Source: Phallusia mammillata (Eukaryota). From it: DNA of 64,000 nt. The DNA is taken from the NCBI GenBank assembly GCA_965637545.1, contig OZ281494.1:29636001-29700000 (forward strand), given 5' to 3'. Positions 53,201 to 56,200 of this stretch are shown piece by piece; position 1 is the stretch's first letter; every line of letters starts with the position of its first letter. The notes beneath the pieces were generated by a model. It was not told where the DNA came from, made no database searches, and saw nothing but the letters and a program-made list of their open reading frames with translations. A program made the translations under genes and the position numbers.

Positions 53201-56200
53201 CTTGCTCACAATGATTTAGGCTATATTTGAGTATGTCGTGACAGCTGGTCTGCATAGACGCTTCAGGGATGGTCCCAGTTATGAATGTATGGTTATCTTA
53301 GCTTCTATACTAGGGCTTTCACCTGTGGCTAATGATTTGGCAGAGAAACGAACACCACAGTAAGACAAGTAATGACAACAATACTTACGAAATACAGTGG
53401 TGACTTCAACGTTCCAAAGCATTACGGCAAACACTTTGTTTCGGGCACAACGGAATGAAACACTGACAACAACAATATTCAATGACTTTTTGATGCTACT
53501 TTGAACAAAAGCTAATACTGTGAAGCAACAGACACGGTGAAACCTATAGCTACATGCACAGCAGGGTTACAGAACACAGCACGTAACGACACAGTTGTTA
53601 TTACCCCTCCCATCCGTTCTACCAGAATATCTCGAACTTCCACCCAACCTTTAAGGGATAGAACCTCAAACAACGCCAACATGGCTGATCCTATCGTGTC
53701 AAAGTTGAAATTGCGAGGGTTGGTCCATACACGAGGCACCATAAATCCTGTAGAAAAATTAAATTCTATTTAAATAAGTCGAAAATTCGTTTTATGGTCC
53801 GAATCAGTTTAAAAGAATCGGTTGAAAATACGAAAAAGTTAAGGCAATTGGGAGTATATAGGCCACAAATTTGTCAGCGTGTTCTGGTACGTTGAGCCTC
53901 AAACACTACTCCTTTTCGCCCTCACCTGGCGGCTCTTCATCTTTGTTGATGTTGTTTGAAACCCAGACTTGCTGATAAAAGATTCCATGACAATCTTCCC
54001 TTTTCTCGATTCGCCAATCGTTGCACGCAGCGAGTTTCCCGCCATAAAGCTGAACCCCGAAACTGGCGAACACAAATACCAGCGCCACCAAGAGAATTCC
54101 AACCTGCAAATGATTATCAACGTGATTCCAGGTGTGCGTTAGTACATAGCTAGTTTTAGAAAAAAAGTGACAGCAAGGCAGGAACTTGGCCGAATGGCCC
54201 GGAGAACCTGACCCATACACAAACATATAAAACCTGATTGGGATTTTTTTTTGTATAATCAACCAGTCAATAAATGGTATGCTACAGACAGCACACACCG
54301 TTTCGACCTATAAGGTCTCATCAGTGCAGCTGGTGACAGGAGTAACAGTCTTAAAAGGCATTATTGTTTTTTATATCACAAAATACAATTTGCGTTATTT
54401 TGTGCGTTTTTTCGACAAATGATTTTATTCGTCTTACCATAACAATCTCTTTGAATCCCCGAAAAAGCTCAACGACGACATTTCGTATTTGCGGGACCAG
54501 TTTGAAAATTCTAAGAGGACGCAAACAGCGAAGAACCATCAGAAATTGACTTGCAGGTTCTGTCAACATAAAACTATTGTTCTTATCGCTCTAAAAAAAT
54601 ATCGCGTTGTTTTACGCATTGTTGCTCGATAGATTCTCATGGAGCCATTTTGTGTCCAAAATAACGCAGCAGTTATTGGGAAAAACACATAAATTGTCTG
54701 ATTTTTACAAACTGAGCTTTAACTCGAAATTTATTGGCCAAAATGTTTTTCCCTATCTCCGCTTTAGGGCGAAACTGATTGGCCTATGTGTTTTCTTCCA
54801 TTTTAACATAGTTCCCATGCAACTAGATGCAAGCTTTAATTTTGTACTGTAGGCTGATGTATCCAAACCTGTGGATGTTGAAAGGGTGCAAACAAAAGTG
54901 AAGGACACAAGAAAAATAGCAACATCGAGAAAACCGCCCAAGTCTTTGAATGTCGGTTTCGGTGTAAAGAGCAGTCCGTTGGCGAAAACCTACATGGTAC
55001 AAAACACGTTGTAAACACTCTAGTATGGGTTATTTTTCTTTATTCATGCACAAAATTACCATATGAAATGATAGTATCTTTTTGAGAAAAGTTGTTTCAG
55101 ATGGCAGAATGATATAACGACATATAAATTCCATATATCTGGTGTCAAACCTTTTAAAAACGTTTAAATTGCAATTACCAACTAGAAGGGTGGCTTAACA
55201 CATATTGCCCTTGCATATACACTATAACCTATTTTAAAACATAAATATATTTCCTATGCTTATTTTGTATTGGGTCCCATATTAGCCATCGTCTTTTATA
55301 ACTTTAGTCGTTTCTGCAGGCAAAAACTCATGGGTCCCCACACATGCAAAGTTGAAAATAATGCAATTCAAGAGATAACCATGAGAAAGTCGGGTGTTGT
55401 AAGGTAAAACACAGTGATCGGCACTGGGCTTAAATAATAATACTATGTAGAATACAAACTACAAAATTAGATTCACCCCAGATATTGTTTGAAGTATGTC
55501 CTATTTAATGTTTTAAAAAACTGACCCATTTTAGGGGGCTAGTAGGGCAACTAATTCGGTTCGACACACAAACTAAAAAATATATAAAAACCACAATGAC
55601 TCAATCAATAGTACTGCAAAATTTCAGCCCAATCCGCCAATGTTTAAAATTTCGACCACTAGAGGTGTTTTGAACAACAACCGTTACTGTTTCTGACGTC
55701 ATAGGGCTGTTGACAAGCCCCCAACTGCCATGGCGCAAAAACAACCACCAAGCAACCCACCAACGAGCAACATACAACTGGTTGCCCTTGTAACACTATT
55801 GCTCCAAAGAAATCTTTCGTCTGTGGTGCCCAGTAACATACAAATACGTTTTACACTTTAGGGGCTTGTGGGGTAAATGTAGGACTACAGGGTTGAACAC
55901 AACAATCGACACCTATAAATGGCATACTATACAAGAAATCCAAATTTCAGCCAATTCTGACACTGTTTAAAAACTCACCCATTTTAGGGGGCTAGCGGGG
56001 TAAATACTGGGGTTATCAACAAAAACAAAGTGGGATGCACATCTACATGAATATATCTACCATCTGTGTAAATTTCAGCCACATCCATCAAACATTTGAT
56101 GGAAAAACGAGTCGGACAAACTTTGGGTAAAAACACCCATTTTAGGGGGCGAGCGGGGTAAATACTGGGGTTATCAACAAAACCAAAGTGGGATGCACAT

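What the first reader, a model, noticed from the sequence alone, without database searches (positions are those of the whole stretch)
54263..54340. Complete type I hammerhead ribozyme in sense orientation inside a NALCN intron
Seen: the NALCN-sense strand of the 334-nt intron 54104-54437 (between the DIII S4 and S5 exons) reads GCUGCA-CUGAUGA-GACC/UUAUA/GGUC-GAAA-CGG/UGUGUG/CUGU-C-UGUAGC. Every catalytic core base is present, the cleavage triplet is the optimal GUC, and the three stems pair using Watson-Crick or G-U pairs only. A distal stem-I helix (CCUGUCA/UGACUGG) beyond an asymmetric loop gives the geometry for loop-II tertiary contacts. An A9 tract follows about 35 nt downstream. Established: type I hammerheads occur in Penelope-like elements and retrozymes, and a few domesticated ones are conserved in amniote introns. 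Inference: this copy could cleave the NALCN pre-mRNA co-transcriptionally and affect splicing or expression. It is not of the minimal palindromic Penelope type and may be a separate or domesticated motif.
Basis: partly seen in the sequence, partly recalled or inferred. Interest (0 to 1): 0.9.

Follow-up and report, generated by a model that had tools for sequence, protein, structure and literature searches.

The report
Repeat-family hammerhead in NALCN intron
The intron does hold a complete hammerhead self-cleaving RNA motif in the gene's orientation, but it is one copy of a repeat present thousands of times in this sea-squirt genome, so it is most likely an ordinary mobile-element insertion and not a purpose-built regulator of the ion-channel gene.

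Summary
The minus strand at 54281-54330 reads as a full type I hammerhead. CUGAUGA, GAAA, G10.1-C11.1, A15.1-U16.1 and C17 are all present, with stems of 6, 5 and 5 pairs. Cleavage would fall between 54287 and 54286. It lies in the sense strand of a 334-nt NALCN intron (54104-54437), which an RNA contig shows to be spliced out. The organism is Phallusia mammillata or a very near relative.

A chance match is very unlikely: 40 Mb of random sequence gave no match at stems of 5, 4 and 4 pairs or better.

The motif is not a separate or domesticated one. In three DNA contig sets of the same species, 1,471-2,671 contigs match the block 54264-54342 at 80% or better. Their summed depth is 5,500-9,300 times the single-copy flanks. 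A second block (54160-54245) is repeated about 700-1,100 times. Other copies continue further 5' and sometimes stand in tandem, at about 53-62 nt or about 180 nt. This fits a Penelope-like or non-LTR-retrozyme type of family.

The same intron in three other tunicate-like contigs has no hammerhead core. No RNA run holds this copy's own 31-letter words.

It may still self-cleave. A selected role in NALCN expression is unsupported. Interest is low.

The parts
54281..54330 (-). Hammerhead catalytic module, type I: stem I GCUGCA/UGUAGC, CUGAUGA, stem II GACCU-UAU-AGGUC, GAAA, stem III ACGGU-GUGU-GCUGU, C17
   Evidence: Read directly. It is the only full descriptor match in the window on either strand. 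Sub-threshold Rfam hammerhead hits.
54286..54287 (-). Predicted self-cleavage site, after C17 (54287), leaving a 5'-OH at U 54286
   Evidence: Follows from the hammerhead numbering applied. Not tested experimentally.
54264..54342 (-). Block shared with the high-copy hammerhead repeat family. Typical matches run 54268-54338/54342.
   Evidence: Summed contig depth is 5,500-9,300 times the single-copy flanks in three DNA contig sets, with 1,471-2,671 contigs laid. The locus's own contigs break inside this block.
54160..54245 (-). Second repeated block, about 700-1,100 times single copy. In at least one other locus it is linked to the hammerhead block in a tandem unit of about 180 nt.
   Evidence: depth table, plus the 'goes back 164' joint with 16 letters between.
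54244..54252 (-). A9 tract in the low-copy linker between the two repeat blocks
   Evidence: The linker bin 54238-54263 is only 4-8 times single copy. No role is shown.
54104..54437 (-). NALCN intron of 334 nt (GT..AG) that holds the element
   Evidence: RNA contig joint that skips 334 nt. tblastn with P. mammillata NALCN.
54438..54563 (-). NALCN exon encoding DIII S4 and the S4-S5 linker
   Evidence: RNA contig piece 54436-54563.
53926..54103 (-). NALCN exon encoding DIII S5
   Evidence: RNA contig piece 53925-54101.

Best explanation
This is a solitary genomic copy of an abundant hammerhead-bearing retroelement family of Phallusia mammillata. The family is of the Penelope-like / non-LTR-retrozyme kind. 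The copy landed in sense orientation in the NALCN DIII S4/S5 intron and rides along as a passenger.

Shown:
- The motif is complete.
- The module is massively repeated in the genome.
- Other copies extend further 5' into a conserved sequence that this copy lacks.
- Other copies sometimes stand head-to-tail.
- This locus has one hammerhead only.
- The insertion is present in all three DNA samples laid.
- NALCN mRNA is spliced normally across the intron.

Inferred:
- The copy arose by reverse transcription and insertion of a family transcript. It looks 5'-truncated or belongs to a short subfamily.
- About 180 of the intron's 334 nt are repeat-derived.
- Because the core is intact, the intronic RNA may self-cleave after C 54287 in a fraction of nascent transcripts. 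I put in-vitro activity at roughly 40-50%.
- Nothing indicates that such cleavage is selected for or regulates NALCN.
For::
- 1,471, 1,710 and 2,671 contigs of three DNA runs match 54264-54342 at >=80%.
- Summed depth over 54290-54341 is 49.9-54.1 thousand against 9.0 (X3), 215-231 thousand against 24.9 (X5), and 1.41-1.67 million against 251 (X2).
- The unique intron parts and the exons are single copy.
- One other single-copy contig matches 54268-54338 with 1 difference.
- The loose-end consensus behind 54337-54342 (GGCCGTATTGGCTAGTGTAGCC, agreement about 0.6) shows that most copies continue 5' into sequence absent here.
- 'Goes back' joints of 52-62 nt and of 164 nt (+16 nt) show tandem arrangements elsewhere.
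- The family-majority letters differ from this copy at 54280, 54284, 54292, 54293 and 54299.
- In the RNA contig set X9, family matches reach depth 916-1,770 against 9 for the NALCN exons.

Other calls:
- Chance is excluded.
- No hammerhead in the orthologous introns of L001, L012 and L013. These introns are 172, 163 and 548 nt. Here the intron is 334 nt, of which about 183 nt are repeat blocks plus linker.
- In Xenopus, dispersed non-LTR retrozyme monomers are common and 42-44% overlap introns.
- Type I hammerheads of animals generally sit in retrozymes and Penelope-like elements.
Against: - I could not retrieve any second copy as sequence. Family boundaries, consensus and target-site duplications are therefore inferred only from depth, joints and 30-nt loose-end consensuses.
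- The tool warns that summed contig depth is not a copy number.
- The differences from the family majority all keep pairing (A-U to G-U, U-A to U-G, G-C to G-U). This is what selection for structure would also give, although three such transitions are weak evidence and may be inherited from a subfamily.
- Close relatives (Phallusia fumigata, Ascidia, Ascidiella) were not available. Conservation within the genus is untested.
Confidence: 0.8

Rival explanations
1. Domesticated intronic ribozyme. The copy has been co-opted, like the amniote RECK/CTCL/DTNB intronic hammerheads, to cleave NALCN pre-mRNA co-transcriptionally and tune splicing or output.
For: - Intact core, sense orientation and a stable stem III.
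- The differences from the family majority preserve pairing.
- The insertion is present in all three DNA samples laid.
Against: - It is one of thousands of look-alikes.
- It is absent from the orthologous intron in three other tunicate-like contigs.
- In nearest-neighbour energies the hammerhead fold lies 5.2 kcal/mol above the best fold. With family-majority letters the gap is 1.7 kcal/mol.
- There is no RNA trace of the intron or of this copy's own words.
- The mRNA is spliced normally.
Confidence: 0.05
2. Active retrozyme locus. The intron copy is a source gene for a small circular RNA made by double hammerhead cleavage and ligation.
For: - Family RNA is abundant in an RNA contig set (X9).
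- Tandem units of about 180 nt exist elsewhere.
- A short CUGUCAC repeat at 54333-54339 and 54167-54173 could be the start of a second unit.
Against: - There is only one hammerhead in the intron and in the whole window. Excision of a monomer needs two cleavage sites.
- No RNA run holds this copy's own words.
Confidence: 0.04
3. Decayed, catalytically dead relic. The motif looks complete, but the wobble pairs in stems I and III and a competing helix (GCACUG with CGGUGU) prevent the active fold.
For: - The minimum-free-energy and centroid folds do not form stems I and III. Their ensemble pair probability is about 0.
- The hammerhead fold is -16.3 against an MFE of -21.5 kcal/mol.
- The copy has five differences from the family majority.
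- Rfam scores are far below gathering.
Against: - No core base is altered.
- Energy models ignore the tertiary contacts of the hammerhead core, and natural hammerheads are often not the predicted MFE.
- The competing helix exists in the family-majority sequence too.
Confidence: 0.1
4. Chance resemblance in AT-rich intron sequence.
For: Rfam gathering thresholds are not reached.
Against: - Zero matches of this quality in 40 Mb of random sequence.
- The same module is repeated thousands of times in the genome.
- Its 5' half recurs nearly letter for letter in hammerheads of two metagenome contigs.
Confidence: 0.01

Closest known systems
Non-LTR retrozymes of animals (Cervera and de la Pena 2020, PMC7229834; Li, Clavereau and Pollet 2026, bioRxiv 10.64898/2026.07.22.740005)
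   Same: - Type I hammerhead with a real helix III.
- Low-GC short units of 150-450 nt.
- Thousands of genomic copies, both as dispersed monomers and in tandem.
- Family RNA is present in transcriptomes.
- Intronic monomers are frequent.
   Different: - At this locus there is one hammerhead and no tandem repeat.
- The unit inferred from joints (about 180 nt, or 53-62 nt hammerhead-to-hammerhead) is at the small end.
- No tunicate family is described in the papers I could search.
- Circular RNA is not shown.
Hammerheads of Penelope-like elements (minimal, dimer-acting; PMC6155905)
   Same: - High copy number and association with retroelements.
- Hammerheads stand back-to-back in some copies.
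- 5'-truncated copies occur.
- Stem III of the family-majority sequence (ACAGUGUGCACUGU) is almost self-complementary and could also pair between two units.
   Different: - Stem III here is 4-5 bp with a 4-6 nt loop, not 1-2 bp with a palindromic loop.
- Helix I is extended.
- No Penelope reverse-transcriptase/GIY-YIG gene lies next to it.
- The minimal GAAACGUC type does occur elsewhere in the window (28417-28715), but BLAST found no similarity between it and the intron.
Amniote intronic hammerheads (Rfam HH9/HH10; RECK, CTCL and DTNB genes; de la Pena and Garcia-Robles 2010, as summarised in PMC6155905)
   Same: A type I hammerhead, in sense orientation, inside an intron of a protein-coding gene, and derived from retroelement hammerheads.
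   Different: Those are single-copy and conserved at orthologous positions across birds and mammals. This one is a member of a multi-thousand-copy family and is absent from the same intron in the three other tunicate-like contigs available.
Schistosoma Sm-alpha and newt satellite 2 hammerheads (Rfam Hammerhead_1)
   Same: Type I topology within short repeated, transcribed, non-coding elements of an animal genome.
   Different: There is no sequence relationship beyond the core. No clan hammerhead model scores above 25.1 bits here, and a lower-scoring match to another family of the clan was left out without being named.

Membership tests
Hammerhead ribozyme (type I) | Invariant core: C3 U4 G5 A6 N7 G8 A9, G12 A13 A14, A15.1-U16.1, and H17 not G | tested here: met
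   CUGAUGA, GAAA, A-U closing stem III, and C17 in a GUC triplet.
Hammerhead ribozyme (type I) | Three helices around the core, with helix I open and helices II and III capped | tested here: met
   6, 5 and 5 pairs (Watson-Crick or G-U). G10.1-C11.1 is present.
Hammerhead ribozyme (type I) | Score at or above the Rfam gathering threshold for a hammerhead covariance model | tested here: not met
   The best scores are Hammerhead_3 at 24.6-25.1 bits (gathering 48.5) and RAGATH-1 hammerhead at 17.6 bits (gathering 56.3). The models are trained on other lineages, so this lowers confidence but does not exclude membership.
Hammerhead ribozyme (type I) | Loop-loop tertiary contacts between helix I and loop II | tested here: inconclusive
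   Helix I has an internal loop and a distal 2+4 bp helix with a U-U mismatch. The 5' strand UGU(C/A)ACCAGCUGCA and loop II UU(A/G)(U/A)A recur in hammerheads of L002 and L003. No structural test was possible.
Hammerhead ribozyme (type I) | Site-specific self-cleavage | not testable with these tools
   This needs in vitro transcription, or read ends. Only assembled contigs were available, and they carry no end information.
Non-LTR retrozyme / Penelope-like hammerhead repeat family | Many dispersed or tandem genomic copies of the hammerhead-bearing unit | tested here: met
   1,471-2,671 matching contigs per DNA run, summed depth 5,500-9,300 times single copy, and tandem joints in other loci.
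Non-LTR retrozyme / Penelope-like hammerhead repeat family | Two or more hammerheads in tandem at the locus, which is needed to release a monomer | tested here: not met
   a single hammerhead in the intron and in the window. The locus is a solo monomer or fragment, not a source array.
Non-LTR retrozyme / Penelope-like hammerhead repeat family | Expression as linear or circular RNA | tested here: inconclusive
   RNA contigs match the family at summed depth 916-1,770 (X9). Circularity and strand are not visible in contigs. This copy's own words are in no RNA run.
Non-LTR retrozyme / Penelope-like hammerhead repeat family | Insertion signatures such as target-site duplication | tested here: inconclusive
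   Only weak A-rich or 7-nt candidates were found: 54363-54376 with 54243-54256, and CTGTYAC at 54342-54348 with 54167-54173. No empty site was available.
Domesticated intronic hammerhead (HH9/HH10-like) | Conservation at the orthologous intron position across species | tested here: not met
   The orthologous S4/S5 introns of L001, L012 and L013 have no CUGANGA on either strand, and the contigs have no Rfam hammerhead at E<=1. These relatives are distant (57-69% identity in the S5 exon). Congeners were not available.
Domesticated intronic hammerhead (HH9/HH10-like) | Single-copy sequence, distinct from active repeat families of the same genome | tested here: not met
   thousands of look-alikes, one of them 70/71 identical.

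The most novel reading that the evidence does not exclude
This particular copy is catalytically competent and cuts a measurable share of nascent NALCN pre-mRNA between the DIII S4 and S5 exons. A repeat-derived ribozyme would then set the output of the sodium leak channel in this ascidian, as an early stage of the domestication seen in amniote introns. A more modest novelty stands apart from this copy: a tunicate hammerhead family with thousands of copies does not appear in the papers I could search.
Probability: 0.05. Interest if true: 0.6.

Novelty: new member of a known kind. Interest (0 to 1): 0.2.

Why it matters
As it stands, this is one more intronic copy of a hammerhead-bearing retroelement, a situation already documented in many animals. 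Its use is mainly as annotation: roughly half of this NALCN intron is repeat-derived.

It is also one data point for a genome-wide question that could be asked in Phallusia. Are sense-oriented, core-intact hammerheads depleted from introns relative to antisense or broken ones? That would measure whether intronic self-cleavage is costly.

The abundance of the family in a tunicate, the sister group of vertebrates, bears on the patchy distribution of retrozymes and Penelope-like elements among chordates.

Tried and rejected
- Rfam at gathering thresholds found no hammerhead. The E-value mode favoured a type III reading that uses an upstream GUC (54335-54337). I rejected it because its helix I would be only the tiny CAGCUG hairpin. 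Word-index searches with the S5 exon plus intron ORF and with the antisense ORF across the hammerhead found nothing. The Phallusia and Ciona NALCN proteins are not on record for contig look-up.\n- A 19-mer scan of metagenome and viral contigs gave 10 hits, about the number expected by chance. Two are real type I hammerheads of another host (L002, L003), and two viral contigs carry an unrelated hammerhead-like motif.\n- The search for target-site duplications gave only weak A-rich or 7-nt candidates.\n- Folding the putative 183-nt unit gave z = -1.8, not a convincing rod.\n- I considered reading stem III as a Penelope-type dimerisation palindrome. The family-majority 14-mer is nearly self-complementary, but any short-loop hairpin is, so I do not claim it.

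Full report
**What is at the coordinates.** The minus strand from 54342 to 54264 reads CUCCUGUCACCA-GCUGCA-CUGAUGA-GACCUUAUAGGUC-GAAA-CGGUGUGUGCUGU-C-UGUAGC-AUACCAUUUAUUGACUGG. My descriptor scan requires CUGANGA, a closed helix II, GAAA, a helix III closed by A15.1-U16.1, H17, and a helix I formed by the flanks. It finds exactly one match in the 64-kb window on either strand, at 54281-54330, with 6, 5 and 5 pairs. The A9 run is 54244-54252. One detail is wrong: the 'distal stem-I helix' CCUGUCA/UGACUGG contains a U-U mismatch, so it has 2 + 4 pairs.

**Gene context.**
- The flanking ORF pieces translate to ...[35 protein letters not shown] and [29 protein letters not shown]....
- The best full-length relatives of the second piece are tunicate NALCN proteins.
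- tblastn of the UniRef Phallusia mammillata NALCN entry (P0143) onto the window gives 22 exon pieces, nine of them 100% identical, including 54435-54563. The piece 53924-54109 is 97% identical. The window is therefore P. mammillata or something extremely close.
- A 2,050-nt contig of an RNA run joins 54101 to 54436, skipping 334 nt with GT..AG on the minus strand. The intron 54104-54437 is real, and the hammerhead is on the sense strand of the pre-mRNA.

**Is it more than chance?** In 40 Mb of first-order Markov sequence with the window's composition, the descriptor hit 4 times at stems >=4,3,3 and never at >=5,4,4. That is about 0.013 expected per window at the loosest setting, and far less for 6,5,5.

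Rfam does not reach gathering. In E-value mode it gives Hammerhead_3 at 24.6-25.1 bits (E 0.0006-0.007), driven by the core and helix II. I read these as weak but consistent support. The decisive support is the family evidence below.

**It is a repeat.** I laid the contigs of three DNA runs and one RNA run of the same species on 53900-54650 at 80% likeness.

| Stretch | X2 | X3 | X5 |
|---|---|---|---|
| Exons and unique intron parts (single copy) | 251 | 9.0 | 24.9 |
| Hammerhead bins 54290-54341 | 1.41-1.67 million | 49.9-54.1 thousand | 215-231 thousand |
| Ratio to single copy | 5,600-6,700 | 5,500-6,000 | 8,600-9,300 |
| Contigs laid | 2,671 | 1,471 | 1,710 |

- The tool warns that summed depth is not a copy number. 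I therefore claim only the order of magnitude, 10^3-10^4.
- The locus's own contigs break inside the hammerhead in all three runs (pieces end at 54323 and begin at 54313 or 54326), as expected at a repeat.
- One other single-copy contig matches 54268-54338 with a single difference.
- A second block, 54160-54245, is about 700-1,100 times single copy.
- The linker with the A9 tract is only 4-8 times single copy.

**What the other copies look like.**
- Depth-weighted majority letters differ from this copy at 54280, 54284, 54292, 54293 and 54299. The majority hammerhead therefore has a perfect GCUGCA/UGCAGC helix I and the helix III ACAGU-GUGC-ACUGU. This copy has three G-U wobbles at those places.
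- Behind 54337-54342 most copies continue into ...GGCCGTATTGGCTAGTGTAGCC... on the plus strand (agreement about 0.6). That lies 5' of the hammerhead in ribozyme sense and is absent here. This copy is therefore 5'-truncated or belongs to a short subfamily.
- A few contigs 'go back' 52-62 nt, meaning hammerhead directly followed by hammerhead. Others go back 164 nt plus 16 letters, meaning hammerhead, linker and block B followed by the next hammerhead. These show tandem arrangements elsewhere.
- In the RNA contig set, family matches sum to 916-1,770 against 9 for the NALCN exons. Family RNA is therefore present. The unique intron parts have depth 0, and no RNA run holds this copy's own 31-letter words.

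**Conservation.** Through exon-sized protein fragments I fetched three contigs of other tunicate-like organisms that carry the same exon pair.

| Contig | Intron length (nt) | Identity of S5 exon to Phallusia |
|---|---|---|
| L001 | 172 | 69% |
| L012 | 163 | 57% |
| L013 | 548 | 66% |

- The intron is at the same position in all three.
- None of the three introns has CUGANGA on either strand, and none of the contigs has an Rfam hammerhead at E <= 1.
- These are distant relatives. The test excludes deep conservation only.
- The Phallusia intron minus its repeat-derived stretch of about 183 nt is about 150 nt, close to the two shorter orthologous introns. This fits an insertion.
- The insertion is present in all three DNA samples laid. 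No DNA joint skips it.

**Likely activity.** No core base is altered and all three helices can form, so self-cleavage is plausible. Nearest-neighbour folding prefers a competitor in which GCACUG (the end of helix I plus C3-G5) pairs with CGGUGU (helix III 5' strand).
- For this copy the hammerhead fold is -16.3 against an MFE of -21.5 kcal/mol.
- With family-majority letters it is -18.7 against -20.4 kcal/mol.

Such models ignore the core's tertiary structure, so this is only a mild hint that this copy folds less readily than the family norm.

**Comparison with what is known.**
- Animal type I hammerheads generally reside in non-LTR retrozymes and Penelope-like elements. Copy numbers run to thousands (about 5,000 in mussel) or more (up to 120,000 in axolotl) (PMC7229834; PMC6155905).
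- In Xenopus, retrozyme monomers are dispersed and 42-44% overlap introns (bioRxiv 10.64898/2026.07.22.740005).
- The domesticated amniote intronic hammerheads are defined by orthologous conservation (PMC6155905), which this one lacks as far as tested.
- I found no paper that describes hammerhead families in Phallusia. The only relevant tunicate mention was 9 type I loci in Didemnum vexillum.
- Other first-stage notes of this scan on the same genome describe many hammerhead elements. They include units of about 175 nt in DUOX introns and a family with a palindromic stem III. These are unchecked notes, but they agree with what one search shows.

**Verdict.** The interpretation as a special or domesticated regulator is not supported. 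The best reading is a solo copy of an abundant hammerhead retroelement family that sits in a NALCN intron. It may still be able to cut itself, with no evidence of a role. Interest 0.2.

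Noticed in passing
window 28417-28715: Fold-back element whose arms carry minimal Penelope-type hammerhead-like units (CUGAUGA...GUCGAAACGUCGG on the minus strand at 28468-28499, and a degenerate inverted partner). BLAST found no similarity to the NALCN-intron sequence, and the unit fails my contiguous helix II rule. 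Another note of this scan already covers it.
   Followed up: partly
window 55372-56337, 58270-59077, 59214-60373: A repeat of about 1 kb is present three times (83-99% identity between copies) inside NALCN introns. It has internal 158-nt sub-repeats and short recurring ORFs ([11 protein letters not shown]..., ...[12 protein letters not shown]...). Its nature is unknown.
   Followed up: partly
window 20182-20257 (-): tRNA-Ser (anticodon GGA), 50.7 bits in Rfam. It is the only Rfam match at gathering threshold in the window.
   Followed up: no
L002:916-994 (-) and L003:1410-1490 (+), metagenome Ga0126339: Two solitary type I hammerheads of an unidentified host. Their 5' halves (UGU/UUU-AACCAGCUGCACUGAUGAGACCUU(A/G)AAGG(C/U)CGAAAC) are almost letter-for-letter those of the Phallusia copy, but helix III is only 2 bp. 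This suggests a hammerhead module shared across distant animal hosts.
   Followed up: partly
L010:8710-8790 and L011:3895-3975 (IMG/VR contigs): Identical hammerhead-like motif in two viral contigs: GUC-UGCAGC-ACAG-CAGCUGCA-CUGAUGAG-ACC...GGUC-GAAAC. Helix I is capped, so it is not type I. It was found only because it shares the 19-mer.
   Followed up: no
window 54035: A T>C difference in the S5 exon in the contigs of two of the three DNA runs (X2, X3). It is presumably an allele.
   Followed up: no
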